DNA of 64,000 nt, from the IMG/VR virus record IMGVR_UViG_3300019776_000324, positions 124,001 to 188,000 of that record; one strand, written 5' to 3'. The notes under the pieces are model-generated. The model made no database searches, was not told the DNA's origin, and saw nothing but the letters and a program-made list of their open reading frames with translations. A program made the translations under genes and the position numbers. Positions 195 through 58,415 of the stretch are shown one piece after another (position 1 is the first letter of the stretch; every line of letters starts with the position of its first letter).

Positions 195-200
195 TAAATA
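195..200 (+). promoter_or_regulatory. Late promoter TAAATA, 4 nt upstream of ATG 205
   Basis: T4 late-promoter core; recurs upstream of many genes in the window. Confidence 0.6.
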
Positions 201-204
201 TGGT

Positions 205-708
205 ATGACAAAAAAATTAGAAGAAATTTTTGGTTTTAACGAGTTAGAAACAGAAGACACTGTGTCCGATGATGCTCCTAAAACCACGGAAGAAACTAAA
301 ACAGCCATAGTAGAAATTGATGCTACTATTGATAAAATTGATGCAGCTCTACCAGCTATCCGTGACTTAGATGCTAGTGATAACGAGCTAGACGAAATAG
401 CCGAAATGGCCAAAGAAAGCTACCAAAATTTATCAGATCTAGGATTCAATGTTGATAGTCGTTATGCTAGCGAGTTATTTGCTGTAGCAAGCACCATGCT
501 TGGACATGCACTAACAGCCAAGACTACTAAACTAAACAAAAAATTAAAAATGCTTGATCTACAAATGAAAAAACTTAAATTGGATCAAGATGCGGCAAAA
601 AATGCTCCAGAAGAGCCTCCTGTAGGCGAAGGACGAGTATTAAACACTATGAATCGCAATGAATTACTAGAACGCTTAATTGGGTCAAGAGACCAAAAAA
701 ACAATTAA
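205..708 (+). CDS. Helical protein, possible terminase small subunit (gp16-like)
   Basis: 167 aa, coiled-coil, ELFAVASTML..ALTAK segment; head/packaging neighbourhood; function weakly supported. Confidence 0.35.
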   Translation: MTKKLEEIFGFNELETEDTVSDDAPKTTEETKTAIVEIDATIDKIDAALPAIRDLDASDNELDEIAEMAKESYQNLSDLGFNVDSRYASELFAVASTMLGHALTAKTTKLNKKLKMLDLQMKKLKLDQDAAKNAPEEPPVGEGRVLNTMNRNELLERLIGSRDQKNN

Positions 709-734
709 GCATAAATATGATATAGGGAATTAAC

Positions 735-1343
735 ATGAAAAATTTTAAAGACTACCTCACCGAATCCGAGCGCACTTACAACTACAGAATTAAACTTGTA
801 GGTGACATACCTTCTACTCTTATTAAAGATTTAGAAGGTAAACTAAAGCAATTTGACATTGTCAAGATTTCTGCTCCAAAGACTACACCAGTTCAAACTA
901 ATCCTGCAGATTTTCCTGCATTTTCAAATGAGCGTGTAACACATGTGGATGTAGAATTCCGCTATCCAGCAATTGAACCACAAATTCAACAAATTGTACA
1001 ATTGTTAGGAGTTGATCCTAATTGTGTGCGTATGTTGACAACACCATACGAAGAAGGTATGAATGTTGAGCGTGACAAGATTGAAGATCAAAACAAAGAT
1101 TTGTTAGCTGATACAGATTACCCTGCACCAGATGCAGAACAAAAAGCTCTCAGCAAAGACTACTCAGCTGATCCATATCAGCATGCTGTATTGAAAAATG
1201 CTTACAAGAGTGACTTTACTGTAGCTGGTGGAAAGACACCTGCTGCACAAACAACAAACGATTTGCCAATGGGTAATACTAGTCCAATGACAAAGATGAC
1301 CCGCAAACCAAAACCAGCTACTGGTGCAAACCCAAAAGGATAA
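735..1343 (+). CDS. Hypothetical virion/internal head protein
   Basis: N-terminus MKNFKDYLTE resembles the T4 capsid-targeting sequence; TAAATA at 712-717. Confidence 0.45.
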   Translation: MKNFKDYLTESERTYNYRIKLVGDIPSTLIKDLEGKLKQFDIVKISAPKTTPVQTNPADFPAFSNERVTHVDVEFRYPAIEPQIQQIVQLLGVDPNCVRMLTTPYEEGMNVERDKIEDQNKDLLADTDYPAPDAEQKALSKDYSADPYQHAVLKNAYKSDFTVAGGKTPAAQTTNDLPMGNTSPMTKMTRKPKPATGANPKG

Positions 1344-1347
1344 CAAA

Positions 1348-6684: not shown

Positions 6685-8250
6685 ATGGCTCAAGATGTAT
6701 CAACCTTAATTAAAACACCGTATAAAAATACGGCATTTACTAACGAACAACTTGAAGAATTCTTAAGGTGCGCAGACCCTGATACGGGTCCTGAGTACTT
6801 TATGGATCATTTCTTTCACATACAACATCCTACTAAAGGTAAAATGTTGTATCATCCTTTTGAGTATCAAAAGAGACTGATTGATACCTATCACAAATAT
6901 CGTTTCAGCATATCAATGATGCCTCGACAAACAGGTAAGAGTACCAGTGCCGCAGGTTACTTGTTATGGTACGCGATGTTTGTGCCGGACAGTACTATTC
7001 TTATTGCTGCTCACAAGTACACAGGTTCTCAAGAGATCATGCAACGAATTAGATACGCATACGAACTATGCCCAGATCACATTCGTGCAGGCGTTACCAG
7101 TTACAACAAAGGTAACTTAGACTTTGAAAATGGTAGCCGTATTGTGTCAGCAACAACTACTGAAAACACAGGACGCGGTATGTCCATATCCTTACTCTAC
7201 GCTGACGAGTTTGCATTCGTTCGTCCCGGTATTGCCAAAGAATTCTGGACTTCTATCAGCCCTACACTAGCAACTGGTGGTAAGGCAATTATTACAAGTA
7301 CACCAAACAGTGACGAAGATCAATTTGCGTTGTTGTGGAAGGGTGCTCTCAAGTGCGAAGATGAGTACGGTAATCCTACAGAAGTAGGCGTCAACGGATT
7401 TAAGTCTTATCGTAGTTACTGGAACGAACATCCTGACCGCGACGAAGCATGGGCCACAGCACAACGAGCACAGCTAGGTGAAGATCGTTTCCGTCGTGAG
7501 ATGGGTTGCGAATTTATTATTAACGATGAAACACTTATTGCTCCTGCTAAGTTAATTGATTTGCAAGGACACGAGCCCTTGTATAAAACTGGGCAAGTGC
7601 GTTGGTATCAAAAGCCCAAAGAAGGGCGCACCTATGTAGTATCGTTGGACCCTAGTCTTGGCACAGGAGGTGATGCAGCTGCCATACAGGTATTTGAAGC
7701 CAATACAACAGAACAAGTAGCAGAGTGGCGTCATAATCGTACACCCATTCCAGAACAAATTAGAATTCTAGCAGACATCTGCAACCATATCAACGAAACA
7801 GTAAACGATATCAAAAGCATCTATTTCAGCGTGGAAAATAACACCATTGGTGAAGCAGCCTTGATCAGTATTGCTGAATACGGCGAAGAAAACATCAAGG
7901 GCTATTTCCTAAGCGAACCAAACGGTGGCGGCAGTCGTAGATATCGCAAAGGTTTTAATACCAGCAACAAGCCCAAACTATCAGCTTGTAATAAACTTAA
8001 AACTTTGATAGAATCTGGAAAAATGAAAATTCGTAGCGCAGGGCTTGTTTCAGAGCTTAAAACTTTTGTAGCAAGCGGAGCTGGATTTGCCGCTAAACCT
8101 GGCGAAACTGACGACTTAGTAATGGCCACTGTACTAAACATCCGTATGCTACAACTGCTACAAACTTACGATACTGGCATTGATAATCAAATGCGAGATC
8201 ACGGGGATATTATAATTGCCCCGATGCCGTTCATATCAGTAATGCGCTAA
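6685..8250 (+). CDS. terL: Terminase large subunit (T4 gp17-like)
   Basis: PRQTGKS Walker A, YADEFAF Walker B, ITSTPN, nuclease DPS.G.GGD and DDLVMA. Confidence 0.95.
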   Translation: MAQDVSTLIKTPYKNTAFTNEQLEEFLRCADPDTGPEYFMDHFFHIQHPTKGKMLYHPFEYQKRLIDTYHKYRFSISMMPRQTGKSTSAAGYLLWYAMFVPDSTILIAAHKYTGSQEIMQRIRYAYELCPDHIRAGVTSYNKGNLDFENGSRIVSATTTENTGRGMSISLLYADEFAFVRPGIAKEFWTSISPTLATGGKAIITSTPNSDEDQFALLWKGALKCEDEYGNPTEVGVNGFKSYRSYWNEHPDRDEAWATAQRAQLGEDRFRREMGCEFIINDETLIAPAKLIDLQGHEPLYKTGQVRWYQKPKEGRTYVVSLDPSLGTGGDAAAIQVFEANTTEQVAEWRHNRTPIPEQIRILADICNHINETVNDIKSIYFSVENNTIGEAALISIAEYGEENIKGYFLSEPNGGGSRRYRKGFNTSNKPKLSACNKLKTLIESGKMKIRSAGLVSELKTFVASGAGFAAKPGETDDLVMATVLNIRMLQLLQTYDTGIDNQMRDHGDIIIAPMPFISVMR

Positions 8251-8254
8251 ATAC

Positions 8255-10282
8255 ATGACTATGTCAACACAAACGCCTTCTAAACAACTATTTGATCTAC
8301 TAGTTAGTAGAGATTTTGATCCTGAAATGCTGGATGTTCAGGGCAAACCTGCTCCAGATCCTAGCAAGGCTGAACTTTTTAACTTTGATTTCCGTGCAGA
8401 TTCTGGCAAAGATTACGGTACTGTAGTAATCATGTTGGGCGATGACAATAATCTTGAAGTTTACTTTGGCGACAATGTAGGTCGTACAATGGAAGGCCAA
8501 GACAAGAATGACTGGTATCAGTTTTTACAACAACTAAAGCATTTTGCAGTTAAGAACTTCATGAGCTTTAGTCCAAAAAATCTTAATCGCTTGCGTTACA
8601 GTATGCAAGGACAAGCAGCAATCAAAGAAGGCCTGTTTGAATCATGGACAGGCACAAAGACACAAAGCTGGAACGGCAAGCAAACAGAAGCTCGCTTGAT
8701 GATCAAGCATAAAAAGACTCTAGGCGAGAACGATGCTCGCTATCGTTACATTGAAAGTTTGTTTATTGAAACAGCCGAAGGTGAACGCTACAAGTTACCA
8801 TTTACTAAACTATCAGGTGGTCGTGCCATGGTAGAACATGTACGCAATGGTGGCAAGCCATACGACATTCGCGGAAATCATATTGCAGAAATAGTTGAAG
8901 AACTAAATGTACTAAGTCGTTTCAAGCGAGCTAACCAAGGTAAAATCTTTGAAGGCGACACAGCACAGTTAGTAGAGCAGACTAATGCTTATTACGAAAC
9001 AGCACAGAAAACATTAAAGAGTCTGAGCACCAACAAAGGATATACAAATTATTTTGAGTCATGGAATCCAGCAGAGATTACTGAACAAGAAGTAGTTATT
9101 GAAGGGTTAAAACATTTATTTGTGACACAAAGTATTGACACAAGAATTGAGTCAGCGTTACCCTTGCTGGCCAAAATACAACAACAAGGAAACGCTATGA
9201 AAGAAGCTAACATATTTGAAGCATGGGCAGATCGCCTGATGGAAGGTACATGGCAATTGCCAGACACACCAGAGAAACAAAACAAGTTAATTGAACTAAT
9301 GAGTCAAGACTTGCCAGTTGGTGCTGATGCTACTAATGCTACAGAACAATTGTATGATCTAATCGGTGATGACGAATTATTTGATCAATTGGAAGCACTT
9401 GCTGACCGTGACGCTAACGCTGATGCTCGTCAAGTCATCTATGATCGATTACAACAATTAAGTGATCATCCTGAAGTATTAAAAGTGGTTAACAGTTTAA
9501 ATATTGATGCTGATGTAGAAATGAATCCGCCCGAAGCTACTAACCCAGCTGACCTGCAACCAATGAATGAAAGTCGTTTAATGGATGCTACTGGTGAAAC
9601 TATCGAACACATTTTAAATCGTTTCAAGCACGAAGTTAAGACATTTGAACAAGGCGGTGACCTAGACGAAGACCTATATCACGCCCTATTTGACTATTGG
9701 AATGATGCCGGCGAGATTCCTTATGGTGTACAAAAGGCTCGCACAGGTGATCCATACGAGTGGGTAGCAAGCAATTTAGAAAGTCATTTACAAGGTGGCG
9801 GTATTGTTGGCGGCAATCCAGATGAAGATTATATGGATGAAACAGTTAAAGATCCAATGACTCAAACTGAAGATCCAGCTAACACACAACAACCAGAGTA
9901 TCCAGAATATCAGGATGACCTAGCTGGTATTCTTAAAACAGCTGGAGTTCCTGCTGTAGTGCAACCAGCACCAAACTATGAAACCGGTGACCTAGAAGAA
10001 GCAATCCCAACTACACTTGAGAATGAAGAAGAAACAGATGAAGGCGTAATTGGTTCTATAGCTGGTGCCGCATTAGGTGCAATGACACCAGTTCCAGGCG
10101 GCGCACTAATTGGTAGTCTGGCAGGCGATGCTATTCAAGACGAATTGTCAGATGAAGAAGAAACAGACGAAGACACAAGTCCATTGGCTGGTAAGTATGG
10201 ACACAGTGGCAAAATGAAAGCAGTATCCAAAGACTTGTCGTTCTTGGATCGTTTGAAAGAACTTTCAGGATTGAAGAAGTAA
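8255..10282 (+). CDS. Large hypothetical protein with acidic C-terminus and glycine-zipper-like segment
   Basis: 675 aa ORF; TAAATA at 8248-8253; GSIAGAALG...GALIGSLAG near the C-terminus. Confidence 0.6.
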   Translation: MTMSTQTPSKQLFDLLVSRDFDPEMLDVQGKPAPDPSKAELFNFDFRADSGKDYGTVVIMLGDDNNLEVYFGDNVGRTMEGQDKNDWYQFLQQLKHFAVKNFMSFSPKNLNRLRYSMQGQAAIKEGLFESWTGTKTQSWNGKQTEARLMIKHKKTLGENDARYRYIESLFIETAEGERYKLPFTKLSGGRAMVEHVRNGGKPYDIRGNHIAEIVEELNVLSRFKRANQGKIFEGDTAQLVEQTNAYYETAQKTLKSLSTNKGYTNYFESWNPAEITEQEVVIEGLKHLFVTQSIDTRIESALPLLAKIQQQGNAMKEANIFEAWADRLMEGTWQLPDTPEKQNKLIELMSQDLPVGADATNATEQLYDLIGDDELFDQLEALADRDANADARQVIYDRLQQLSDHPEVLKVVNSLNIDADVEMNPPEATNPADLQPMNESRLMDATGETIEHILNRFKHEVKTFEQGGDLDEDLYHALFDYWNDAGEIPYGVQKARTGDPYEWVASNLESHLQGGGIVGGNPDEDYMDETVKDPMTQTEDPANTQQPEYPEYQDDLAGILKTAGVPAVVQPAPNYETGDLEEAIPTTLENEEETDEGVIGSIAGAALGAMTPVPGGALIGSLAGDAIQDELSDEEETDEDTSPLAGKYGHSGKMKAVSKDLSFLDRLKELSGLKK

Positions 10283-14956: not shown

Positions 14957-14964
14957 TATAAATA
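14957..14964 (+). promoter_or_regulatory. Late promoter TATAAATA
   Basis: Exact T4 late consensus, 5 nt before ATG 14970. Confidence 0.7.
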
Positions 14965-14969
14965 GAAAC

Positions 14970-15650
14970 ATGATTCCAATTTTTATCGGGTATGATCCTC
15001 GAGAAGCAATCGCTTTTCATGTATGCGCAAACAGTATTATTCGACATGCTAGCCAACCTGTGGCAATTGTGCCGTTGGCTCTTAACCTATTTAAAGATTA
15101 TAACGAAACACACACAGATGGCAGTAATCAATTTATCTACAGTCGTTTCCTAGTTCCTCATTTAATGAGCTATAACGGTTGGGCAATTTTTATCGATGGT
15201 GATATGATTGTTCGCGATGATATTACTAAACTGTGGGACTTACGAGATAGTCATAAAGATGTCATGGTAGTCAAGCACGACTACAAAACCAAAATGAAAC
15301 AAAAGTATCTTGGTAGTAAGAACGAGGACTATCCTAGAAAAAACTGGTCCAGTGTTATTCTTTGGAATTGCAATAATCATCCAAATAGAAAATTAACTCC
15401 CGAATTCATTGAACAATCAACTGGTGCATACTTACACCGTTTCAGTTGGATCGATGATGAGCGCATTGGCGAACTACCAAAAGAATGGAATTGGTTACCA
15501 GACGAATATGGACCAAACCTAGATGCTAAACTACTACACTATACTTTGGGTACTCCGTGTTTTCACGAGTTTGCTACAACACCTCAAGGTGACGAATGGC
15601 ATCAAGAGAGAATGCTAACAGATTACTGCTTACAAAAAACACATGATTAA
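14970..15650 (+). CDS. Glycosyltransferase (GT-A, GT8-like)
   Basis: IFIGYD.RE, F.YSRFLVP, FIDGDM, YPRKNWSS, LHYT.G.P. Confidence 0.85.
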   Translation: MIPIFIGYDPREAIAFHVCANSIIRHASQPVAIVPLALNLFKDYNETHTDGSNQFIYSRFLVPHLMSYNGWAIFIDGDMIVRDDITKLWDLRDSHKDVMVVKHDYKTKMKQKYLGSKNEDYPRKNWSSVILWNCNNHPNRKLTPEFIEQSTGAYLHRFSWIDDERIGELPKEWNWLPDEYGPNLDAKLLHYTLGTPCFHEFATTPQGDEWHQERMLTDYCLQKTHD

Positions 15651-16575: not shown

Positions 16576-17242
16576 ATCGTTGTGCCCATTCTGATCTAAT
16601 TTTTTTCATATCTTCATGATTGTATAATTTTTTATTATACTGACGATCTTGAAATGTTGCATCTAGATTGTTGCCCGTTACATCAAAACGATCGTGAAAT
16701 ACACTTACTGGGATTTCCTTAACAGCACCTGCTTCGTGACAGATATCTTGTATCCAAGAATCGTTCAATTGATGCAAACTAATCTCACCAAACAACTCAA
16801 TCCAAACTTTAGGGATTAACGGAAATAAGGTTAGGGTCTTTTTAAAATTTTCAGTAGTCATGTGTAGTAAACCAACATAGTCCTGTTCTGCGGCCAAATG
16901 TTGATCCCAGTCTGGAGTGAGCATTACAGCATCATCATTCCAAACCATAAGCCACTGTCCTTGTGATTGTTTTGCCATGGCAGTATAGTAGAAGTTAAGT
17001 CCACTGTACCCCCAACAAGGACAACAACACACTTGGGTATGAGAACCAAAACGATCAATCAAGTCACTCCACTGCGCACTGTTAAAGTACTCGTGACTGT
17101 TGGCATCATCCTCGTCGTAAGCAATCATGATTTCAATTTGGCCAGGATTGTCGCTGTTACTTAATAGGCTTTCAACTGTGCGCTTGACTAACGGAATTCG
17201 GTTTCTTGTGGGTAAAAGTACGCTGACTAAAATATCGCTCAT
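16520..17242 (-). CDS. Glycosyltransferase family 2-like
   Basis: VSVLLPTRNR, YDEDD, WNDDA; probable start ATG 17242, 4 nt after minus-strand TAAATA (17247-17252). Confidence 0.8.
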   Translation of the reverse strand: MSDILVSVLLPTRNRIPLVKRTVESLLSNSDNPGQIEIMIAYDEDDANSHEYFNSAQWSDLIDRFGSHTQVCCCPCWGYSGLNFYYTAMAKQSQGQWLMVWNDDAVMLTPDWDQHLAAEQDYVGLLHMTTENFKKTLTLFPLIPKVWIELFGEISLHQLNDSWIQDICHEAGAVKEIPVSVFHDRFDVTGNNLDATFQDRQYNKKLYNHEDMKKIRSEWAQRFKLYREQTGACEPTPVQI

Positions 17243-17280
17243 ATTATATTTACTCAAAAACTACGCATATAAATATTCCT

Positions 17281-17988
17281 ATGCTAGCTTATGTTATCGG
17301 TCTTGGTCAAATTCCTAGTTCTTTCGAAAGTGCAGTACAAGTCTACAACCAACTAAAAGAGTATGGATTAGACGCACGGTTCCACGAAGGTACCTACGGC
17401 AACCACGCACAAAAAATATTTGATTCAGAAGGCCGAACTCTTTATCATACTAGTTTCAAAGGTAATCCTGTTGACGACGAATATCGTGCCAGTGCTACAC
17501 GCCCTGGAGTAATGGGTTGTTTTCATAGCCATTTTAGATTATGGCAACGATGTGTAGAAATCAACGAACCCATACTAATTTTTGAAGATGATGTTATATT
17601 TGAAAGAGGCTGGACGCCAATTGAATGGGAAGATGTATTGCTAGTAGCCACAGGCAAATCTGTTTATAAAGACGAATGGTATGCGGAAAAATTGTATAAC
17701 CCTACAGGTACACCACATGCAGTTCCTCTTAATCGCAAAGTCATGCCTGGAGCAGTTGGATATGGACTTACTCCACAGGGTGCAAAGAAACTTACAGACT
17801 TTTATAAAAATTATTTTGCTCCAGCTGACAATTCAATGAATGCCACTGTGGTTAGCTTACAGTGTCACACTTATCTTATGGGCCGTGCAGCCATTGATGA
17901 AGATGGAAAGAAAAGTTTAACTAAAACTAAAATGTGGGACAAGCAACCTAAGTCTAAGACAGCGATTGCCAATATGCCTCGGGTCTAG
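17281..17988 (+). CDS. Glycosyltransferase family 25-like
   Basis: GCF.SH..LW, ILIFEDD, GY...P.GAKKL; TATAAATA at 17268-17275. Confidence 0.8.
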   Translation: MLAYVIGLGQIPSSFESAVQVYNQLKEYGLDARFHEGTYGNHAQKIFDSEGRTLYHTSFKGNPVDDEYRASATRPGVMGCFHSHFRLWQRCVEINEPILIFEDDVIFERGWTPIEWEDVLLVATGKSVYKDEWYAEKLYNPTGTPHAVPLNRKVMPGAVGYGLTPQGAKKLTDFYKNYFAPADNSMNATVVSLQCHTYLMGRAAIDEDGKKSLTKTKMWDKQPKSKTAIANMPRV

Positions 17989-18763
17989 CCATTGTAAGAT
18001 CTGTTTTATTACTTTTGCCTGACACTTTTCTAGCACCTTTAAGATGGTCCATAAATTGTCCTAGGTCAGAATTTATAAACGGATGCCCGGCTCGTCCTGG
18101 CTTTTGTATCACAGTACTCAGATTGTGAAATTGATTAGTATCGTGAAATTTACGACGAATTTCATCCCACACATAACTGTCGTGCCATTCAGGAAGTTCA
18201 AAGATTCTATCCTGGTCATACATGCCCTTGAGTTGTGCTATAAAGTTTCTAGTTTCTGGATGATCTAAATTATATGCAACCCATCCACATTCTGAATGAT
18301 ATTTCTCGCCTCGTCCTAAGTAGCTAATCATTGCTGTTGAAGGACATAGTTTTTCCAAGTCAGCTATGGTAATGTCGCTGTGAGTACAAGTATCTGCATC
18401 TAACCAAATTAACCAACCTCCGCTAGTGTAGTTTGCTAACAGGGCAATAGAATAAATTTTATAAGAAAATCTTACTGCGTCCCATCTAAACGACTTCTTT
18501 GCATTGAACACTTCGGGTGGGCCGTCTTGTCCGTGTGCCTTGGGATTATTACGATGCCGTTCAATAAAAGTGTTCAACGGTGTGCTTAGTTTTAATAAAT
18601 CGTAAACCTTGACATTTGGTTTAGTAATAACAGGCTGGCAATTTTCAGCACAGGCAACTAGTTCTACTTGGTCTGGCCAATGCTTTTCAAATGTATCTAT
18701 CATGCGCTGACCGTATTGTTTTAGTCCATCAGCATTAAATGTGGTAACTACAGTATATTTCAT
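17954..18763 (-). CDS. Nucleotide-diphospho-sugar transferase (GT-A)
   Basis: VVTTF, RFSYK, LIWLDAD, SECG, EWHDSYV, HLKG.RK. Confidence 0.75.
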   Translation of the reverse strand: MKYTVVTTFNADGLKQYGQRMIDTFEKHWPDQVELVACAENCQPVITKPNVKVYDLLKLSTPLNTFIERHRNNPKAHGQDGPPEVFNAKKSFRWDAVRFSYKIYSIALLANYTSGGWLIWLDADTCTHSDITIADLEKLCPSTAMISYLGRGEKYHSECGWVAYNLDHPETRNFIAQLKGMYDQDRIFELPEWHDSYVWDEIRRKFHDTNQFHNLSTVIQKPGRAGHPFINSDLGQFMDHLKGARKVSGKSNKTDLTMARPEAYWQSLS

Positions 18764-18779
18764 ATAAGTATTTAACCTT

Positions 18780-22041: not shown

Positions 22042-22074
22042 ATTTGCAATTTTACGGTCACTAAATATCTTATA

Positions 22075-22875
22075 ATGAAACTAATATTGTCAAATGGTAC
22101 AATTATAGATTTAATACTAAACAATTCCCCACTAAGTTTACAGTACCAAAAAATTTATAAAAATTTATCACATGTCCCTGTTCCTTTTAAACCTTGGGAC
22201 AATCCGTATTACCTCAGTGATATGAGCTACGAGCAATTGGTGGACCAGCTAATTTACTATGCTACCCAAGTATCAGTTGAAATTGATAAAGCCCGTTGTT
22301 TAGAACAAGATCAAGAATACTTTAATACAATACACAAAATTTATGAAACAAACTACAACGGCGAATCAAAGTGGTTAGATTTTCACGAACATATTCATCT
22401 GTGCGAGCTTTACTATAACTTTACAAACTACTCATTGAACATTGACTACAGAGAGAAGTCGGGTCTATTAGAAAAACCATTTGACCAGACCTGGTTAACA
22501 GATGCAAGTACAAAGATCTCTGCCGGTACTGTATATGTGGCCTGGGCCGAATTAGGAAAAACACCATATTCATATTGGGAAAACAATGAACCAGACGATA
22601 TAGATCGTATGTGTGCGCTGGCCAAGCCTTGGTTAAAATTGCGTCCAAAACTTGTGATTGCACTTGAAAATATTGATACTCTAACGGATATACAAGTCGA
22701 GGAATTTGATCATTGGTGGAAAAATTACAGCGATCGTTGGTGTAAGCATTGGGAGTTGACATCGTGGACAGTTCAAGACATGCATGCGGTATCGGTACTT
22801 GGGCATATTCCAGATCTTGATAGATTGTTAGTGGAATTAAAGAATAAAAATTTTCCAGTGCGAGTAACTTTATAA
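22075..22875 (+). CDS. Hypothetical protein, paralog of 11490-12398
   Basis: 266 aa; HEHIHLCE, WAELGKTPY; TAAATA at 22062-22067. Confidence 0.65.
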   Translation: MKLILSNGTIIDLILNNSPLSLQYQKIYKNLSHVPVPFKPWDNPYYLSDMSYEQLVDQLIYYATQVSVEIDKARCLEQDQEYFNTIHKIYETNYNGESKWLDFHEHIHLCELYYNFTNYSLNIDYREKSGLLEKPFDQTWLTDASTKISAGTVYVAWAELGKTPYSYWENNEPDDIDRMCALAKPWLKLRPKLVIALENIDTLTDIQVEEFDHWWKNYSDRWCKHWELTSWTVQDMHAVSVLGHIPDLDRLLVELKNKNFPVRVTL

Positions 22876-24017: not shown

Positions 24018-24730
24018 AGAAAAAAATAAGTGAGCTGATGATTAAAAAATATGCAGGACAACAGTGCGTGTTGCCAGCGTACAATCCTTCTGCTGACTTT
24101 GATTGGATACAAAATGAATCTGGATTACCGTGGTTAAAATTAAACATACAAGTTCCTTACAAACAAATCCTTGAAGAAATTGAAAAGGTTAACGGTTTGT
24201 TAGTTAACCACAGAGGCGAGTACGAAGAACATGCAGGCTGGAAAAGTTTTTGTATATGTGGTAAAAGTTTTGATGCTACCAAAGAAGATGAGTTTTACAA
24301 TGATGATCGTCCGTATATTTGGACTCCGGAAGCCAAAGCATATATGCCAAACACAGTGAAGTATTTTTCAGACTGTTGGCCCGCTAATACATTCTTTCGA
24401 GTAAGAATCATGTTACTCGAACCGCATGGTTACATATCTATTCATAAAGACACAGAGATCTCACAACTATACCCTGTCAATATTGCTATAACACAGCCAA
24501 CCGATTGCCTATTTGTAATGGAAAAACACGGAGTCATTCCGTTTTCACCAGGAGATGCTTATTGGTTAGACATATCAAACAACCACGCATTAGTTAATAA
24601 CAGCGATCAACCAAGATGGCACATAATTGTACATCAAAAAATCGATAACAACGAATTCGAATCGATGGTTGTAAATTCATATCATATGCTGTATAATAAC
24701 TATAATGAAAACAGCTACAATAATAATTAA
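24014..24730 (+). CDS. Aspartyl/asparaginyl beta-hydroxylase-like 2OG-Fe(II) oxygenase
   Basis: RVRIMLLEP.G.I..HKD, NIAI, H...N.S...R.HII. Confidence 0.8.
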   Translation: MKKKISELMIKKYAGQQCVLPAYNPSADFDWIQNESGLPWLKLNIQVPYKQILEEIEKVNGLLVNHRGEYEEHAGWKSFCICGKSFDATKEDEFYNDDRPYIWTPEAKAYMPNTVKYFSDCWPANTFFRVRIMLLEPHGYISIHKDTEISQLYPVNIAITQPTDCLFVMEKHGVIPFSPGDAYWLDISNNHALVNNSDQPRWHIIVHQKIDNNEFESMVVNSYHMLYNNYNENSYNNN

Positions 24731-26166: not shown

Positions 26167-26196
26167 GGTTGCAACTATACTAAAATATGTTATAAT
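26167..26196 (+). promoter_or_regulatory. Sigma70-like promoter
   Basis: GGTTGCAA...TGTTATAAT upstream of ATG 26203. Confidence 0.55.
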
Positions 26197-26202
26197 AAAT
26201 CT

Positions 26203-26703
26203 ATGAGAATATTAACACTTGACGATACACCGTATGATTTGGATCATCTTCCAGACGAAGTAGATGACATGCGTTTTGCTATATTTGATAACAGCGATCC
26301 CAAAGATCCAGACTATCATTATATTCCGCTAATCTTTTTAGAAAGTTTTACTGCGCCTGCGTTGGTCTTGCGCATTGGAACCAATCTTGTACGCATGCCA
26401 GTGGATTGGCAAATCTTAATTGGTGAACCAGACTTGGGTGATCTTGAAGTACTACCTTTAACCAGCATCAATGATCGTGGATTCAAAGCATTTCAATTCA
26501 ATCCATTGAGTAGTTTTAGACCTAGTTTTCTTGATATAGAAATTGTAGATGTCTACCAAGAAGTAACATGGTATGCTCCTAAGTTAAAAAATGGTCAGAT
26601 GTTATGTGTACCAGTTAGTAACGGTGAAAAGCCTGAGTGTGTTTATTTTGTTAAAGATATTAGTCGCAACTGTGAAGTAGTTGATTACAATCGAGCTTGG
26701 TAG
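26203..26703 (+). CDS. Stand-alone protein with degenerate Hint (intein-like) pattern
   Basis: ILTLDDTPYDLDHL ~ block A without Cys1; LVLRIG...VRMPVDWQILI ~ block B; IEIVDVY..V.WY ~ block F. Confidence 0.45.
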   Translation: MRILTLDDTPYDLDHLPDEVDDMRFAIFDNSDPKDPDYHYIPLIFLESFTAPALVLRIGTNLVRMPVDWQILIGEPDLGDLEVLPLTSINDRGFKAFQFNPLSSFRPSFLDIEIVDVYQEVTWYAPKLKNGQMLCVPVSNGEKPECVYFVKDISRNCEVVDYNRAW

Positions 26704-28398: not shown

Positions 28399-28750
28399 TT
28401 GATTTTCGCTTGGATTTCTTGCGACCCATTTCGCTTAGACTGCAAACAGGGCCATGTAGTATTTCCAAGTCCTTGTTGGTAAAAGTACGCAAATAGGGCT
28501 TGAAACCATCCCATTCATGTTTAAGGAATATGTTAATAGGAACGCTACGATTGCTTTCCCACCACCAAACATTAGCTAACTCTAAAAACAGTCGTTTTGC
28601 TTCAATGTCTTGAATAGCACCGAAATCGTAGATAGTAGTAATAGCATCGTCTTGATTTTGTACAATTCCTATATATTCGTTAGAGGCGTAAACACACAGC
28701 GTTATAAACGGATATTTTTCAGCTAATTTAGTAAAGATTTCGGCATTCAT
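28373..28750 (-). CDS. Hypothetical protein
   Basis: 125 aa, WWWESNR.VPI; minus-strand TATAAATA at 28760-28767. Confidence 0.7.
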   Translation of the reverse strand: MNAEIFTKLAEKYPFITLCVYASNEYIGIVQNQDDAITTIYDFGAIQDIEAKRLFLELANVWWWESNRSVPINIFLKHEWDGFKPYLRTFTNKDLEILHGPVCSLSEMGRKKSKRKSITLVRKID

Positions 28751-28759
28751 ATTATGGGA

Positions 28760-28798
28760 TATTTATACTTTGGAAATGGCCGTTTAAAACTATAAATA
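28760..28798. promoter_or_regulatory. Divergent late promoter pair
   Basis: TATAAATA on minus (28760-67) and on plus (28791-98). Confidence 0.7.
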
Positions 28799-28802
28799 CA
28801 TC

Positions 28803-29996
28803 ATGTATTCAACTACCGCCTATATATACCAACAGATCACACGAGTATTGCTAATAGACACTGGCGATGGTGAAACTTTTACTTATAGGTATAACCCCGT
28901 GTACGCTAAACGACTAACAATTAATAAAGGTGTTGACAATGTGCTCTTGTTTGAGTTTGTCAACCAAGAGGAAAAACCTGTTAATATCACAGGTAGTTCA
29001 TTCATGTTCCGTGTTGTGGATACAACAGGAACTACTATGATTATTGAACAGCCAATGACTGTGCTAAATGGCCCAACTGGCCGTGCTAAAGTTACACTGA
29101 CTAGAGATCAACTGTACAATGTACTAGCAGAACCAGGCAACTACAGCATCAGTAGAACACAACCCATGGGCGGCCTAACAGAAGCTGTATTCACAGATGC
29201 ACAATCTGGTGCTGCTGCACCCATTGACATTGTAGACAGCGTATATCCACAGTTTGTACCTAGTCGTCCACTTACAATACCTACAACAAAATTATCAGCA
29301 CAGGGCAGTTATGCTGGTGCCAGTTTTGCCAACTATCCAGTAGCAGCCAGCTATTGGTCTGGAAACCCTAACGGCGCTAATTATTGGAACAGTTTCTTGA
29401 ACACAGAATTCTTTAGTAGTTTTGTTATACCTAAACAGGGCGTTACTACTATTCAAATGGACCTAATTGGTTATACAGGAACAATCAAGGCACAAGCCGC
29501 AGAAGATTATGAAGCAGTCCCATTTAATGTGACCGACAGTACAACTTACTACAACCACACTGGAACAGTATATCTAAACATCATTGGTTGGTATCCGTTG
29601 GTTAGATTATGTTTTAACAACAGCATATTTGCTACACCAACTCAACCTGGCACTCCGGCAATTGCGTATGCTGTATGCGAAAACGGAACGGTTGCCAGTA
29701 TCAATGTTGTCAACGGTGGTAGCGGATATCTTGCACCTCCTCAAATTGATATTATTGGCGATGGTGCTGGCGCAACTGCTAGGGCTATCATGAGCGCAAC
29801 CTACCCAATTGGTCATCCAGCAGCTGGTATTGGATACGGTTCGGTAATTGGTATTGAAGTCATTACCGGAGGTAGCGGATATTGGGTAGTTCCAAATGCC
29901 GGTATCAACACTCCTGTTTATCCTGTGGCTCCAAACAATCAAGGTGCAATGGTCTTGATTGGTACAGGATTTGTGGACAATTTATACTACAGATAA
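28803..29996 (+). CDS. Virion structural protein (baseplate/tail-associated)
   Basis: 397 aa; I.V.NGGSGY...P.I.I.GDG.GA.A motif typical of T4-like baseplate proteins; late promoter. Confidence 0.55.
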   Translation: MYSTTAYIYQQITRVLLIDTGDGETFTYRYNPVYAKRLTINKGVDNVLLFEFVNQEEKPVNITGSSFMFRVVDTTGTTMIIEQPMTVLNGPTGRAKVTLTRDQLYNVLAEPGNYSISRTQPMGGLTEAVFTDAQSGAAAPIDIVDSVYPQFVPSRPLTIPTTKLSAQGSYAGASFANYPVAASYWSGNPNGANYWNSFLNTEFFSSFVIPKQGVTTIQMDLIGYTGTIKAQAAEDYEAVPFNVTDSTTYYNHTGTVYLNIIGWYPLVRLCFNNSIFATPTQPGTPAIAYAVCENGTVASINVVNGGSGYLAPPQIDIIGDGAGATARAIMSATYPIGHPAAGIGYGSVIGIEVITGGSGYWVVPNAGINTPVYPVAPNNQGAMVLIGTGFVDNLYYR

Positions 29997-30032
29997 GTTG
30001 ATCTTTACCAAACAATCTGCTATAATAGTAGC

Positions 30033-30995
30033 ATGATTGATGTGGTTTCTTTTTTACCTGCTAAACGAAAACAAACAAGTTCTGGTTGGATAAGTTTCAA
30101 CGCACCTTGTTGTGTGCATCGTGGCGACTCACAAGACAAGCGACAGCGTGGCGGACTTAAACCCGGCACAGATGGTTCGTGGTCATATCATTGTTTCAAC
30201 TGTGGCTATACTGCCTCGTTTGTGCTAGGCCGCAATCTGACATTCAAAGCTCGTCGATTACTAGAGTGGCTTAATGTGCCCACAGAAGAAATAGAACGAA
30301 TCAATCTTGAAAGTTTAAAGCATAGATCAATCGAAGGCTTATTAGGCGAGCGTCAAGAAGTAATACAAAAATTACAAAGTATTGAATTTGAAGATAGAGA
30401 TTTACCTGCAGATACATACCCACTCAATGACACAGCTACAGAATATTTAAAAAATAGATGCGTTCCACTAGACTATCCATTCCTGTATAAAACAATGCCA
30501 CGCCCCGGAGTTGTAATTCCCTTTACACACGATAATCAAGTAGTAGGACATACAACACGATTCTTAGATGATCGAACTCCTAGATATATTCAAGACATAC
30601 AACACGGTTATGTGTTTGGCACAGACTTGCAAAAAGATTCATGGCAATCAGTGATTGTTGTTGAAGGTGTATTTGATGCATTAAGCATTGATGGGCTTGC
30701 AGTGTTGCATGCCGAGATCAACGATGCACAAGTTAGACTAATACGCAGTCTAGGACGAGAAGTTGTTGTAGTCCCGGATCAAGATGAAGCTGGTATAAAA
30801 CTAGTAGATCGTGCTGTGGAACTAGGGTGGGCAGTAAGCATACCCGAGTGGCCAGAAGGCATCAAAGATGTCAATGACGCTGTAATTCGTTTGGGTAGAC
30901 TTGGAACTTTGCTAATTATAATGCAAGCCAAAGAAACTAGTAAAATTAAAATAGAACTAAGGAAGAAACAACTTGTTAAAAGACTACGGACTTGA
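30033..30995 (+). CDS. gp61: DNA primase (gp61-like)
   Basis: Zn-binding PCC/HCFNC, TOPRIM VEGVFDA, PDQDEAG, KDVND; TTGATC-17-TATAAT upstream. Confidence 0.85.
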   Translation: MIDVVSFLPAKRKQTSSGWISFNAPCCVHRGDSQDKRQRGGLKPGTDGSWSYHCFNCGYTASFVLGRNLTFKARRLLEWLNVPTEEIERINLESLKHRSIEGLLGERQEVIQKLQSIEFEDRDLPADTYPLNDTATEYLKNRCVPLDYPFLYKTMPRPGVVIPFTHDNQVVGHTTRFLDDRTPRYIQDIQHGYVFGTDLQKDSWQSVIVVEGVFDALSIDGLAVLHAEINDAQVRLIRSLGREVVVVPDQDEAGIKLVDRAVELGWAVSIPEWPEGIKDVNDAVIRLGRLGTLLIIMQAKETSKIKIELRKKQLVKRLRT

Positions 30996-33374: not shown

Positions 33375-33408
33375 AATCTAATAAATAATAAAAAGGTCCT
33401 GGACTAAA

Positions 33409-36834: not shown

Positions 36835-36867
36835 GTTGGCTTATTTTTACGCCTTAAATACATCACT

Positions 36868-37122
36868 ATGCAAGTTAGCAAAATAACTGAAGTAACGATA
36901 TTTGAAAGTCCAGATGGTGGTCGTACTGTGTATGCTCGTCGCCCTGGTGAAAACGCTAGGAATCTGCACAGCCAAGATCCTGAACTACAACAACTTTCAA
37001 AGGATTTAGAAAACTCCAAACGCTGGGTAGAAATATTCCAAGCTCGACGAGACAATGCATCATTGGATCAATTGTGCGAACAAGTAGAAATACTTTACGA
37101 ATTATCAAAAGGATCTCAATGA
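36868..37122 (+). CDS. Hypothetical protein
   Basis: IFESPDGG.TVY.R; TAAATA at 36855-36860. Confidence 0.7.
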   Translation: MQVSKITEVTIFESPDGGRTVYARRPGENARNLHSQDPELQQLSKDLENSKRWVEIFQARRDNASLDQLCEQVEILYELSKGSQ

Positions 37123-56357: not shown

Positions 56358-56551
56358 TGCAAGCAAAACCAGGAACAGTAGGTGGTTGTGGATGTGGCCG
56401 TAGCCCAACAGGTAAATGTTGTGGCTGGCATGCTCTAACTGAAGATCAGTATCGTGTCAAGAAAGACGAGTATGATCTAGCGCAATACCGAGAACAAGCT
56501 GAAGAACTTTGGTTCTCGGGTGGCTCGTGTACAGGCGGCCGACCTGAGTGA
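56357..56551 (+). CDS. CDGSH-like iron-sulfur/zinc finger protein
   Basis: CGCGRSPTGKCCGWH resembles C-x-C-x2-S-x4/5-C-D-G-S-H. Confidence 0.6.
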   Translation: MQAKPGTVGGCGCGRSPTGKCCGWHALTEDQYRVKKDEYDLAQYREQAEELWFSGGSCTGGRPE

Positions 56552-56650
56552 ATTAAATATCAAAATCGCTATTGTGTTAGCGATATATTATGCTTTAAAC
56601 CTACTAATACTTTGGTTGGTGCATATCTTTACTAAAAAATACGACGACAA

Positions 56651-56875
56651 ATGAATCCAATCACACTACTTACAAATGGCCTTAATGATTTATGGTTCTG
56701 GACCTATGGCATTATCGCTGGTTGGGGATTGACTTTTACTTTAGTTGTTGTAGCACTGACATTGTTATTGGTAAGAACAATTAACCTACAACGCCGTATA
56801 GATCGATTAGAAAGTCGTTTAGTACACGCCGAAAGAGATTATAACCTGTCTATTTCTCAAAACAAATACAAATAA
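56651..56875 (+). CDS. Small membrane protein
   Basis: Hydrophobic helix followed by a coil. Confidence 0.6.
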   Translation: MNPITLLTNGLNDLWFWTYGIIAGWGLTFTLVVVALTLLLVRTINLQRRIDRLESRLVHAERDYNLSISQNKYK

Positions 56876-56885
56876 ATATTAAGTT

Positions 56886-58415
56886 ATGATATTTGGATAC
56901 TTTACATTATTTGTGGCCTTGTTAATCGAGGTAGTTGGTGCTTACTATAGTATCACTGGACTTGCGGCGATCTTCTCTGGAGCAGTAGTTCCAATTTTGA
57001 TCATGGGCGGTAGCTTAGAGCTAGGCAAAGTCACAGCGGCAGTATGGTTAAAGAACAACTGGCATCGTGCTAGTGCTCAATTTAAACTATATCTATTGCC
57101 AGCAGTAGTAATGTTGATGTTTATTACAAGTATGGGTATCTTTGGATTCCTTTCAAAGGCACACAATGATCAAAACTTGGTAAGTGGTGATGTACAAAGC
57201 AAGATTGCCATTTACGATGAAAAAATTAAGATACAAAAAGACAACATTGAATCTGCTCGTCGTACATTACAACAAATGGATGCCGCAGTTGACCAAACCA
57301 TGGCTCGAAGCACCAACGAACAAGGTGCAGACAAAGCTACAGCAATTCGTCGCAGTCAGTCCAAAGAGCGTGGTAACTTACAAAAAGAAATTGCCACAGC
57401 ACAATCTGAAATTGTCAAGTTAAACGATCTTCGCGCTCCTATTGCCGCAGAAGTGCGCAAGGTAGAAGCAGAAGTTGGTCCTATTAAGTATATTGCTAAA
57501 ATGATCTACGGCGATAATCCTGATGCTAACATACTAGAAAAAGCAGTGGTATGGGTTATTATTATGATTGTTGCTGTATTTGATCCGTTGGCACTTGTAT
57601 TAATTTTAGCTGCACAACAAAGTATTCGTTGGGCCCGAGGTGAAGATGATCCAGACCCTACTCCACGCAAAACTTTGACCCGCGGTGAATATATAAAACA
57701 ACTTCGTGGGAAGTTTATCAAAAAACCTCAACAAGAATATGATCAGTCTGACAATCTTGAACCTGTAGTAAACGAAGTAGAAATTCCTGATGAATATTTC
57801 AATGAATCGGCTACTCAAGAAGATAAGAAATATAAGATACTATCTAGTCTAGACAGTATGTGGTCAAGCGCCAAGCGTTTGGTTAAAAAAGACACCGAAG
57901 CCGAACATGCTCCTATTGAAGAATTAATTATAGATGATCCTCTACCTGCCGACGAGCTTATAAGCATAGAAGAAAAAGAAGCTCGCCGTCGCTGGAAAGA
58001 AGCCAACCCAGAAGATACAATCAAACATCAAAAACGATTGTTAAGCATTGGTGCTATTTCAGACTTACCGTGGAATGATAAAAAATATTGGCCATCGTTG
58101 GGTCTCGAAGCTGACAATGCGCCGGATAGACTTGCTGGCGAAGTTAAAGGCTTTGGCACACAGTTCCCAGCAAAGCCATCTAAGAGTGATATGTTTTTGC
58201 GTGTGGATCAATTGCCAAGTAGATTATACAAATTTAACGGAAATCATTGGATTGAAGTAGACAAGACATTAAGTGATCAATATGCATACGACGAAGCATA
58301 CATCGATCACCTCATTGAAAAAATTAGTACTGGCGAATTTGATCTTGACTTGTTAAGCGAAGCTGAACGAGCTAGTATTGAACAACGCTTAAACGATACT
58401 CAAACAAAGGCATAA
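56886..58415 (+). CDS. Multi-pass membrane protein with coiled coil
   Basis: Three N-terminal TMs, coil, VFDPLA TM, acidic C-terminus; TAAATA 56873-78. Confidence 0.7.
   Translation: MIFGYFTLFVALLIEVVGAYYSITGLAAIFSGAVVPILIMGGSLELGKVTAAVWLKNNWHRASAQFKLYLLPAVVMLMFITSMGIFGFLSKAHNDQNLVSGDVQSKIAIYDEKIKIQKDNIESARRTLQQMDAAVDQTMARSTNEQGADKATAIRRSQSKERGNLQKEIATAQSEIVKLNDLRAPIAAEVRKVEAEVGPIKYIAKMIYGDNPDANILEKAVVWVIIMIVAVFDPLALVLILAAQQSIRWARGEDDPDPTPRKTLTRGEYIKQLRGKFIKKPQQEYDQSDNLEPVVNEVEIPDEYFNESATQEDKKYKILSSLDSMWSSAKRLVKKDTEAEHAPIEELIIDDPLPADELISIEEKEARRRWKEANPEDTIKHQKRLLSIGAISDLPWNDKKYWPSLGLEADNAPDRLAGEVKGFGTQFPAKPSKSDMFLRVDQLPSRLYKFNGNHWIEVDKTLSDQYAYDEAYIDHLIEKISTGEFDLDLLSEAERASIEQRLNDTQTKA

What the first reader, a model, noticed from the sequence alone, without database searches (positions are those of the whole stretch)
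195..56888. Many late genes appear leaderless or nearly so
Seen: TAAATA ends only 4-9 nt before the start codon, with no SD in between, at ATG 205 (4 nt), 8261 (7), 14970 (5), 17242 minus (4), 17281 (5), 18763 minus (5), 22075 (7), 28750 minus (9), 28803 (4), 36868 (7) and 56886 (7). Early genes and chaperones instead have strong AAGGAG SDs. Established: TATAAATA is a -10 element, so transcription would start at or next to the ATG. Inference: two translation-initiation regimes, notable in a phage carrying its own bS21.
Basis: partly seen in the sequence, partly recalled or inferred. Interest (0 to 1): 0.6.

Follow-up and report, generated by a model that had tools for sequence, protein, structure and literature searches.

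The report
Leaderless late genes in a jumbo phage
In this 344-kb freshwater phage and its relatives, about a tenth of the genes have a promoter so close to the start codon that the mRNA should begin at or within 3 nt of the AUG, with no ribosome-binding site; T4 and cultured relatives show no such placement, but no RNA data confirm it.

Summary

**In the whole 344-kb phage:**
- 34 genes have TAAATA ending 4-9 nt before an ATG, with peaks at 4, 5 and 7 nt. None has a convincing Shine-Dalgarno (SD) sequence.
- TAAATA is depleted about 3-fold inside genes on both strands.
- The phage encodes a gp55-type late sigma factor.
- TAAATA precedes the portal, baseplate and other virion genes.
- T4 geometry puts the transcription start at the 6th base after the motif, so predicted leaders are 0-3 nt for most sites.

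**In relatives:** the motif-to-ATG spacing is kept in 47/49, 54/54 and 37/58 distinct upstream regions of three genes. The variants instead have TAAATA 15-27 nt upstream plus an SD. Spacings of 8-14 nt never occur.

**Controls:** the same pipeline finds no such placement in T4 or PA5oct.

- About half of the late promoters have short SD leaders.
- Host-type TTGAC-N17-TATAAT promoters also sit exactly 6 nt before ATG at about 13 genes.
- bS21 also occurs in PA5oct and Atu_ph07, which lack the trait.
- The likely host lineage (Polynucleobacter) shows its own -10-N6-ATG peak.

No RNA data were available, so transcription start sites remain inferred.

The parts
195..207 (+). TAAATA (195-200) + 4 nt + ATG 205; gene 205-708 (167 aa, phrog_16202, unknown function)
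   Evidence: no SD
8248..8263 (+). TAAATA (8248-8253; its TAA is the stop of gene 6685-8250) + 7 nt (catgACT) + ATG 8261; 673-aa virion structural protein
   Evidence: 52 of 54 distinct ortholog upstreams keep a spacing of exactly 7 nt and 2 have 5 nt; the A at spacer position 5 is invariant in the 52.
14959..14972 (+). TATAAATA-type motif (TAAATA 14959-14964) + 5 nt + ATG 14970; GT8-like glycosyltransferase
17240..17252 (-). TAAATA (17252-17247) + 4 nt + ATG 17242; GT2-like glycosyltransferase. Back to back with the next promoter in a 38-nt gap.
17270..17283 (+). TATAAATA (TAAATA 17270-17275) + 5 nt + ATG 17281; GT25 glycosyltransferase
18761..18774 (-). TAAATA (18774-18769) + 5 nt + ATG 18763; 269-aa protein with no family match. 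Lies in a 16-nt divergent gap.
22062..22077 (+). TAAATA (22062-22067) + 7 nt + ATG 22075; 266-aa protein. A T-run lies just upstream.
28748..28765 (-). TATAAATA (TAAATA 28765-28760) + 9 nt + ATG 28750; 125-aa protein (phrog_11637)
   Evidence: The divergent motif is kept in the closest relatives.
28793..28805 (+). TATAAATA (TAAATA 28793-28798) + 4 nt + ATG 28803; 397-aa protein with weak matches to virion-protein families
   Evidence: 47 of 49 distinct ortholog upstreams keep the motif 4-6 nt before ATG; 2 variants have 15 nt plus GGAG.
36855..36870 (+). Intrinsic-terminator-like hairpin + T-run, then TAAATA (36855-36860) + 7 nt + ATG 36868; 84-aa protein
56873..56888 (+). TAAATA (56873-56878; its TAA is the stop of ORF 56651-56875) + 7 nt + ATG 56886; 509-aa protein (weak match to a virion structural family)
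24667..24707 (+). Sigma70-type promoter TTGTAA-N17-TATAAT (24692-24697) + 7 nt + ATG 24705: leaderless-type placement at a host-type promoter
26167..26205 (+). Sigma70-type promoter TTGCAA-N16-TATAAT (26191-26196) + 6 nt + ATG 26203
29996..30035 (+). Sigma70-type promoter TTGATC-N17-TATAAT (30021-30026) + 6 nt + ATG 30033
59576..59831 (+). bS21 gene (59610-59831, 73 aa) with TAAATA (59576-59581) 28 nt upstream and a weak AGGAAA SD. This is a late promoter with a leader, not leaderless.
712..737 (+). Example of the leadered late class: TAAATA (712-717) + 17 nt containing AGGGA + ATG 735. Others lie at 33382, 37525, 38228 and 41542.

Best explanation
TAAATA is the core of this phage's late promoter and is read by host RNA polymerase carrying the phage's gp55-family sigma factor. 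At 34 genes (11 in the window) the motif is placed so that transcription should begin on the A of the ATG (spacing 4-5 nt, 20 genes) or 2-5 nt before it (spacing 6-9 nt, 14 genes; 10 of them at spacing 7). The resulting mRNAs are leaderless or nearly so, and would be translated without an SD, presumably by 70S or 5'-AUG-dependent initiation.

A second set of late promoters lies 17-30 nt upstream and makes minimal leaders that begin right at an SD. Evolution toggles single genes between the two layouts.

The same leaderless placement occurs at host-type sigma70 promoters (TATAAT-N6-ATG). It also appears in the genome of the likely host lineage, Polynucleobacter (Burkholderiales). The trait is therefore most likely an adaptation to a host whose ribosomes already handle leaderless mRNA, not a late-only regime created by phage bS21.

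**Shown:** motif, spacing, statistics, conservation, the sigma gene, absence of SD.
**Inferred:** the transcription start position and the translation mode.
For: **Spacing and statistics**
- Sites and distances are verified.
- The spacing is bimodal at 4-9 and 17 nt or more, with only two doubtful non-ATG candidate starts (TTG at 13, GTG at 14) in the 10-16 gap. The relative G001 shows the same pattern.
- TAAATA is depleted in coding interiors in both orientations: 47 observed against 131 +/- 10 expected in sense, and 44 against 161 +/- 14 in antisense. This points to a DNA-level signal.

**Promoter identity**
- A gp55-family sigma is encoded: phrog_12791 E 7e-61, phrog_234 E 6.5e-23, 42% identity to the late sigmas of Atu_ph07 and PA5oct.
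- TAAATA precedes the portal (spacing 7), the baseplate wedge (spacing 19) and virion proteins.

**Start-site geometry**
- T4 TATAAATA spans -13..-6, so +1 is the 6th base after the motif (PMC7892883).
- 33 of 34 sites have a purine, nearly always A, at position 5 or 6.
- In leadered promoters the SD never begins less than 4 nt after the motif and piles up at 5-6 nt.
- 6 of 34 sites have a terminator-like hairpin just upstream, against 4 of 411 control genes.
- 11 of 34 sites are divergent from their upstream neighbour, 7 of them in gaps of 16-57 nt.

**Translation features**
- No convincing SD: median duplex energy +1.0 kcal/mol, with 1 of 34 at or below -6. Only scattered, non-ATG downstream alternatives reach that level.
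- The start codon is ATG at 34 of the 35 candidate starts at spacings 4-9 (the other is GTG), and GTG/TTG are not enriched at these spacings.
- The first 40 nt of these coding sequences are less structured than in other genes (p = 0.007).

**Conservation**
- Three ortholog sets keep the spacing while the flanks diverge. The variants switch to spacings of 15-27 nt plus an SD.

**Controls and parallels**
- T4 TATAAATA never lies closer than 13 nt to a start, and PA5oct is flat.
- Sigma70-type promoters in the same genome peak at exactly 6 nt.
- Polynucleobacter TANNNT peaks at 6 nt: 27 against a background of about 6.
Against: - There is no transcript 5'-end evidence. No RNA run was listed, so start sites rest on T4 geometry applied to a sigma that is only distantly related to gp55.
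- The first two bases of T4's TATAAATA are not conserved here; the consensus is NTAAATA.
- T4-type gp33 and gp45 families were not detected.
- At spacing 4 the canonical +1 (6th base) falls on the T of ATG, so a one-base-earlier start must be assumed.
- 12 of the 34 sites lie 3-16 nt after a same-strand gene with no terminator. Read-through polycistronic mRNA and termination-reinitiation could also feed these starts.
- The host assignment rests on GroEL (79% identity) and bS21 (65% identity) similarity only.
Confidence: 0.75

Rival explanations
1. TAAATA next to the ATG acts at the RNA level. It would be an A/U-rich, SD-independent ribosome-binding or enhancer element (for example bound by bS1) on longer, polycistronic transcripts, not a promoter.
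For: Many sites sit 3-31 nt after a same-strand gene with no terminator. A/U-rich enhancers upstream of start codons are known (own knowledge).
Against: - The motif is avoided equally on the antisense strand of genes, which an RNA signal would not require.
- The same hexamer occurs 17-30 nt upstream with an SD in between.
- It matches the core of the T4 late promoter, and a gp55-family sigma is encoded.
- 11 of 34 sites are divergent from their upstream neighbour, 7 of them in gaps of 16-57 nt, where the transcript must start close by.
- A sigma70 -10/-35 pair shows the same placement.
Confidence: 0.07
2. The promoters are real, but the first ATG is not the translated start. Transcripts would begin at or inside the annotated 5' end and translation would start at a downstream codon, or the transcription start lies well upstream because this sigma uses a different geometry.
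For: No transcription start or N-terminal data exist. The sigma is only distantly related to T4 gp55. At spacing 4 the canonical +1 would fall inside the ATG.
Against: - Only scattered, non-ATG downstream alternatives carry any SD within 50 codons.
- Ortholog matches start at residue 1, and third-codon-position variation begins directly after the ATG.
- There is a purine at position 5 or 6 in 33 of 34 sites.
- The SD offset is never below 4 nt.
- The gap at 10-16 nt is what a fixed start 5-6 nt after the motif predicts.
Confidence: 0.1
3. Termination-reinitiation coupling. The TAA of TAAATA would be the stop of the upstream gene, and the ribosome would restart at the nearby ATG, so the conserved spacing reflects coupling rather than a promoter.
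For: At 8248 and 56873 the TAA of the motif is the upstream stop. In many orthologs of the 8261 gene the upstream frame ends in that TAA.
Against: - Only a minority of sites overlap an upstream stop.
- 11 of 34 sites are divergent from the upstream neighbour.
- The ATA after TAA is as conserved as the TAA itself.
- Several sites follow a terminator or a gap of 66-444 nt.
Confidence: 0.05
4. Chance in an AT-rich background, or an artefact of gene calling.
For: The genome is 40% GC and its intergenic regions are AT-rich. Gene starts were called with a home-made caller.
Against: - The other A4T2 hexamers give flat profiles, apart from echoes of overlapping hexamers and the separate TATAAT class.
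- The share of TAAATA copies followed by ATG at 4-7 nt is 19%, against 7% in Markov simulations.
- The peaks are out of frame with the motif's TAA.
- Spacing is conserved across more than 150 distinct related upstream regions.
- T4 and PA5oct, run through the same pipeline, show no peak.
Confidence: 0.02

Closest known systems
Bacteriophage T4 late promoters (gp55/gp33/gp45; for example P23)
   Same: A gp55-family sigma is encoded. The promoter is an A/T-rich -10-like box containing TAAATA with no -35 element, and it precedes virion genes.
   Different: In T4, with the same pipeline, no TATAAATA lies closer than 13 nt to a start, and the mode is 13-29 nt with SD leaders. Here about 40% of the gene-proximal motifs lie 4-9 nt from ATG with no SD. 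The first TA of the octamer is not conserved. The sigma is longer (about 290-317 aa, phrog_12791). T4-type gp33 and gp45 families were not detected.
Thermus phages phiYS40 and Lalka27a
   Same: Most transcripts are leaderless, with the A or G of the initiator codon at the 5' end. This includes late genes driven by a phage-specific -10 element (bioRxiv 10.64898/2026.04.20.719267).
   Different: The host phylum (Deinococcus-Thermus) is one where leaderless mRNA is common. The late -10 element (TAGGGT) is different and there is no gp55-type sigma. In those phages the start sites were mapped; here they are inferred.
Lambda cI mRNA from PRM, and leaderless genes of bacteria (mycobacteria; the -10 box about 6-7 nt before ATG modelled by GeneMarkS-2)
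   Same: A -10 element is placed so that +1 is the A of AUG. AUG is required, there is no SD, and the 5' end has little structure.
   Different: Lambda has a single such gene. Here there are about 47 genes (34 late-type and 13 sigma70-type) in one phage, conserved across a clade.
Freshwater bS21-encoding huge phages (Chen et al. 2022, PMC9723584)
   Same: These are large lake phages in which bS21 is co-expressed with structural genes. Here bS21 has its own TAAATA promoter.
   Different: Those phages are predicted to infect Bacteroidetes and carry Bacteroidetes-like bS21. This phage's GroEL and bS21 resemble those of Burkholderiales. That paper does not discuss promoters or leaderless mRNA: a search of its text found no occurrence of either word.
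Cultured jumbo relatives PA5oct, Atu_ph07 and PBECO4 (RaK2-like)
   Same: They share the late sigma family (38-42% identity). PA5oct and Atu_ph07 also encode bS21.
   Different: TAAATA-N4-7-ATG is not enriched over its reversed control in any of the three. In PA5oct, the full pipeline shows no peak, and only SD-type hexamers are enriched 3-9 nt before ATG.

Membership tests
T4-type (gp55-dependent) late promoter system | Phage encodes a gp55-family late sigma factor | tested here: met
   phrog_12791 E 6.9e-61 and phrog_234 E 6.5e-23 at G000:C1:73467-74270. 42% identity to the annotated late sigmas of Atu_ph07 and PA5oct.
T4-type (gp55-dependent) late promoter system | Promoter is a -10-like TATAAATA box with no conserved -35 | tested here: inconclusive
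   The core TAAATA is strongly conserved and nothing upstream is. The leading TA is present in only 14 of 197 copies, so the consensus is NTAAATA.
T4-type (gp55-dependent) late promoter system | The motif precedes late (virion) genes | tested here: met
   Portal, baseplate wedge, head decoration/fibre and several virion structural proteins carry it. Timing of expression was not measured.
T4-type (gp55-dependent) late promoter system | Co-activator gp33 and sliding clamp gp45 | tested here: inconclusive
   T4's own families phrog_254 and phrog_223 gave no match in the genome. Divergent counterparts could be missed.
T4-type (gp55-dependent) late promoter system | Transcription starts about 6 nt after the last A of the box | not testable with these tools
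   No RNA run was listed. Indirect support comes from a purine at position 5 or 6 in 33 of 34 sites, an SD offset never below 4 nt, and an almost empty 10-16 nt gap.
Leaderless mRNA | Primary 5' end at, or within a few nt of, the start codon | not testable with these tools
   Inferred from promoter geometry only.
Leaderless mRNA | No Shine-Dalgarno sequence, and no room for one | tested here: met
   The median anti-SD duplex energy is +1.0 kcal/mol, against -3.3 for all genes. 1 of 34 sites is at or below -6.
Leaderless mRNA | AUG start codon | tested here: met
   34 of the 35 candidate starts at spacings 4-9 are ATG and one is GTG. GTG/TTG are not enriched at those spacings.
Leaderless mRNA | Weak structure at the 5' end | tested here: met
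   The MFE of the first 40 nt is -2.13 kcal/mol, against -3.37 for other genes (Mann-Whitney p = 0.007). The effect is modest.

The most novel reading that the evidence does not exclude
Late in infection the phage's own bS21, itself made from a TAAATA promoter, replaces host bS21 and retunes ribosomes. The retuned ribosomes would favour the phage's leaderless and minimal-leader late mRNAs over host mRNAs. That would make this clade a natural system in which a virus-encoded ribosomal protein sets the mode of translation initiation.
Probability: 0.1. Interest if true: 0.85.

Novelty: new variant of a known kind. Interest (0 to 1): 0.55.

Why it matters
- T4-type late transcription is a textbook system, and its mRNAs carry SD leaders. 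Here a gp55-type promoter is fused to the start codon at dozens of genes, apparently for the first time. No paper in the searched library links the two.
- The ortholog series that toggle between 'TAAATA-7 nt-ATG' and 'TAAATA-25 nt-SD-ATG' form a natural experiment. They show that the two initiation modes are interchangeable and that spacings of 8-14 nt are avoided.
- The work suggests that Polynucleobacter, a very abundant freshwater bacterium, has a sizeable leaderless gene class.
- Gene callers tuned to SDs will mis-start these genes.
- The tempting link between phage bS21 and leaderless translation is weakened.

Tried and rejected
- **RNA evidence:** The look-up of sequencing runs listed no run (none was listed, which is not the same as none exists). 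Read laying could therefore not be used.
- **Near-identical phage records:** megablast found none.
- **Literature:** a search for 'CTAAATA' returned only noise. The PA5oct omics paper describes TATAATA/TTGAC promoters but says nothing on leaderless mRNA. The phiKZ dRNA-seq study found no leaderless transcripts, and AR9 UTRs are 26-491 nt, so these jumbo phages are not analogues.
- **T4 co-activators:** the T4 gp33 and gp45 PHROG families were not found in the genome.
- **Host signal with a strict motif:** perfect TATAAT-N6-ATG is not enriched in the Polynucleobacter genome (12 against a control of 13). Only the degenerate TANNNT analysis at called starts shows the peak. A version that did not use the gene caller was too noisy because of frame effects.
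- **A at +4 as a leaderless mark:** not different from other genes (50% against 57%).
- **bS21 as a correlate of the trait:** rejected on distribution.


Full report
**Context.** The window is G000:C1:124001-188000 of a 344,244-bp IMG/VR phage record with direct terminal repeats and 40% GC. I called 445 genes with a codon-usage-based ORF picker; they cover 95% of the genome.

**Observation.** All 11 motif/ATG pairs are at the stated coordinates and distances.
- TAAATA is the rarest A4T2 hexamer in the genome, with 197 copies on both strands. A 3rd-order Markov model expects 420 +/- 18.
- 43 copies lie 0-15 nt before a candidate start, peaking at 4 (10), 5 (11) and 7 (10) nt. The other A4T2 hexamers are flat, apart from echoes of overlapping hexamers and an ATAATA peak that belongs to the TATAAT class below.
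- 62 copies are fully intergenic, although only 5% of the genome is non-coding.
- Restricted to ATG at spacings 4-9, there are 34 sites genome-wide: 10, 10, 1, 10, 2 and 1 at spacings 4 to 9.
- Among hexamers ending 3-9 nt before ATG, TAAATA is the only one in the top 14 that is not SD-like, in this phage and in its 317-kb relative G001. It is absent from the top lists for T4 and PA5oct.

**What the motif is.**
- The phage encodes a gp55-family late sigma (phrog_12791 E 7e-61, phrog_234 E 6.5e-23). It is 42% identical to the annotated late sigmas of Atu_ph07 and PA5oct and 38% identical to those of the RaK2-like phages.
- TAAATA-preceded genes include the portal (spacing 7), virion structural proteins, the baseplate wedge (spacing 19), a head-decoration/fibre protein and several glycosyltransferases.
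- Inside coding sequences the motif is depleted about 3-fold in both orientations relative to synonymous-codon shuffles: 47 against 131 +/- 10 in sense, and 44 against 161 +/- 14 in antisense. This is expected for a DNA signal, not an RNA signal.
- T4's own gp33 and gp45 families were not found. This leaves the co-activator question open.

**Geometry.**
- In the T4 open complex the flipped bases are at -12, -9 and -8, which puts TATAAATA at -13..-6 (PMC7892883; 'about one helical turn upstream', PMC2988020). The transcription start (+1) is therefore the 6th base after the motif.
- At spacing 5 that base is the A of ATG. At spacing 4 the A is base 5. At spacing 7, base 5 is A in 8 of 10 sites here and in all 52 spacing-7 orthologs of the 8261 gene.
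- Overall, 33 of 34 sites have a purine at base 5 or 6.
- Predicted leaders are 0 nt for 20 genes, about 2-3 nt for 11, and 3-5 nt for 3.

**A second late class.**
- 37 further TAAATA copies lie 10-45 nt before a start, mostly at 17-26 nt. 28 of them have an SD 4-mer in the right place.
- The SD never begins less than 4 nt after the motif and piles up at 5-6 nt. These leaders therefore start at the SD, which independently fits a start 5-6 nt after the motif.
- Between spacings 10 and 16 there are only two doubtful candidate starts, both non-ATG (TTG at 13, GTG at 14). G001 shows the same pattern.
- The bS21 gene (window 59610-59831) belongs to this leadered class (spacing 28).

**No SD and no alternative start.**
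- The 34 sites have a median anti-SD duplex energy of +1.0 kcal/mol, against -3.3 for all genes. One site is at or below -6.
- Only scattered, non-ATG downstream in-frame codons reach a comparable SD score.
- The first 40 nt of these coding sequences fold more weakly than in other genes.
- 11 of 34 sites are divergent from their upstream neighbour, 7 of them in gaps of 16-57 nt. One example is the 38-nt gap 17243-17280, which holds two back-to-back motifs.
- 6 of 34 sites follow a terminator-like hairpin, against 4 of 411 control genes.

**Conservation.**
- For the 28803 gene (relatives at 63-77% aa identity), 47 of 49 distinct upstream regions keep TAAATA 4-6 nt from ATG while the flanks diverge. 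Two variants carry TAAATA-15 nt with GGAG.
- For the 8261 gene, 52 of 54 have exactly 7 nt and 2 have 5 nt.
- For the portal (75-91% identity), of 58 distinct upstream regions 36 have spacing 7 (one of these at its second in-frame ATG) and 1 has spacing 6. Another 17 have TAAATA 17-27 nt upstream with an AAGGA-type SD. The remaining 4 have no TAAATA within 36 nt of the first ATG.
- Single genes therefore toggle between the two layouts, and spacings of 8-14 nt are never seen in these sets.

**Controls.**
- With the identical pipeline, T4 has no TATAAATA closer than 13 nt to a start (mode 13-29 nt) and PA5oct is flat.
- TAAATA-N4-7-ATG against its reversed control gives 36 vs 19 in G001 and 38 vs 21 in G000. 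It gives 16 vs 20 in T4, 39 vs 58 in PA5oct, 36 vs 56 in Atu_ph07 and 21 vs 51 in PBECO4.

**Corrections to the interpretation.**
1. Leaderless placement is not confined to late promoters. Full sigma70-type promoters (TTGNNN-N16-18-TAYAAT) are also bimodal: 13 at 5-8 nt (9 of them at exactly 6, which puts +1 on the A) and 20 at 26-33 nt. Three of the 13 are in the window, at ATG 24705, 26203 and 30033.
2. bS21 also occurs in PA5oct and Atu_ph07. Neither shows enrichment of the TAAATA pattern, and PA5oct shows no leaderless placement of any kind. bS21 is absent from T4 and PBECO4. In E. coli it is ribosomes lacking uS2 and bS21 that accompany enhanced lambda cI leaderless translation (PMC10491246).
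3. The phage GroEL is 79% identical to that of a Polynucleobacter, and the closest of the 80 kept matches are nearly all Burkholderiales or other Betaproteobacteria. The phage bS21 is 65% identical to that genome's bS21. In 400 kb of that genome, TANNNT peaks exactly 6 nt before first ATGs (27 against a background of about 6), and only 34% of starts have an SD 4-mer. The host lineage thus appears to use leaderless mRNAs itself.

**What is known.**
- Leaderless phage transcripts are documented for lambda cI and, genome-wide, for Thermus phages YS40 and Lalka27a.
- phiKZ has none, and AR9 has long UTRs.
- Chen et al. 2022 tie bS21 to late expression but do not discuss promoters or leaders.
- I found no paper linking gp55-type promoters to leaderless mRNA.

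**Limits.**
- No RNA run was listed, so start sites and the translation mode are inferred.
- Gene starts come from my own caller.
- The host is inferred from two host-like genes.

**Verdict.** It is a new variant (a gp55-type promoter fused to the AUG) of known things (late promoters, leaderless mRNA). The early/late dichotomy and the bS21 link are not supported.

Noticed in passing
window 24667-24707, 26167-26205, 29996-30035; genome-wide 13 sites: Canonical sigma70-type promoters (TTGNNN-N16-18-TATAAT) end exactly 6 nt before ATG. This is a second, host-type class of leaderless-placed genes. The spacing is bimodal (5-8 and 26-33 nt), and G001 has 10 such sites at 6 nt.
   Followed up: partly
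L387-L406 (G002:C2:1-400000, Polynucleobacter sp. CS-Odin-A6): In the likely host lineage, TANNNT peaks sharply 6 nt before first ATGs (27 against a background of about 6, among 286 genes), and only 34% of starts have an SD 4-mer. This suggests a sizeable native leaderless gene class in Polynucleobacter.
   Followed up: partly
L307-L386 (portal orthologs); L016 and L073 (28803 orthologs): The same gene toggles between TAAATA-7 nt-ATG with no SD and TAAATA-17-27 nt-ATG with an AAGGA or GGAG SD in different sub-lineages. Spacings of 8-14 nt do not occur.
   Followed up: yes
window 60284-62210: The GroES/GroEL pair has strong AAGGAG SDs. GroEL is 79% identical to Polynucleobacter GroEL, which suggests recent acquisition from a Burkholderiales host.
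   Followed up: partly
window 62238-62265 and G000:C1:~204150-204180: Both 5' leaders share the 16-nt core GTGCCGATGGTCGGGC (exact shared 13-mer GCCGATGGTCGGG), about 20-30 nt downstream of a TAAATA and upstream of a strong SD. In the window copy the core sits in the hairpin ctgtgggtGCCGATGGTCGGGcccacag; the arms differ in the second copy. It may be a leader RNA element. Only two copies exist.
   Followed up: no
window 8245-8263 and G000:C1:112614-112632 (-): The identical string cgcTAAATAcATGactATG, with two in-frame ATGs at spacings 1 and 7, precedes two different virion structural protein genes (phrog_13484 and phrog_11591).
   Followed up: no
W02 (PA5oct) 170985-171143; W03 (Atu_ph07) 489120-489257; G001 175131-175283: bS21 genes are present in the cultured jumbo phages PA5oct and Atu_ph07 as well as in G001. 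bS21 is therefore widespread in this sigma-sharing group, irrespective of leaderless architecture.
   Followed up: partly
window 14970-18763: This is a cluster of three glycosyltransferase genes (GT8, GT2, GT25 types) plus an unknown gene. All have TAAATA placed 4-5 nt before ATG, arranged as divergent pairs in gaps of 38 and 16 nt.
   Followed up: partly
W04 (PBECO4) 161429-167654: TAAATATAGTATAATG recurs five times at intervals of about 1.2 kb, with one variant copy (TAAATATATTATAATG) in the same series at 163914. This points to a tandem paralog array with a conserved start region in a RaK2-like phage.
   Followed up: no
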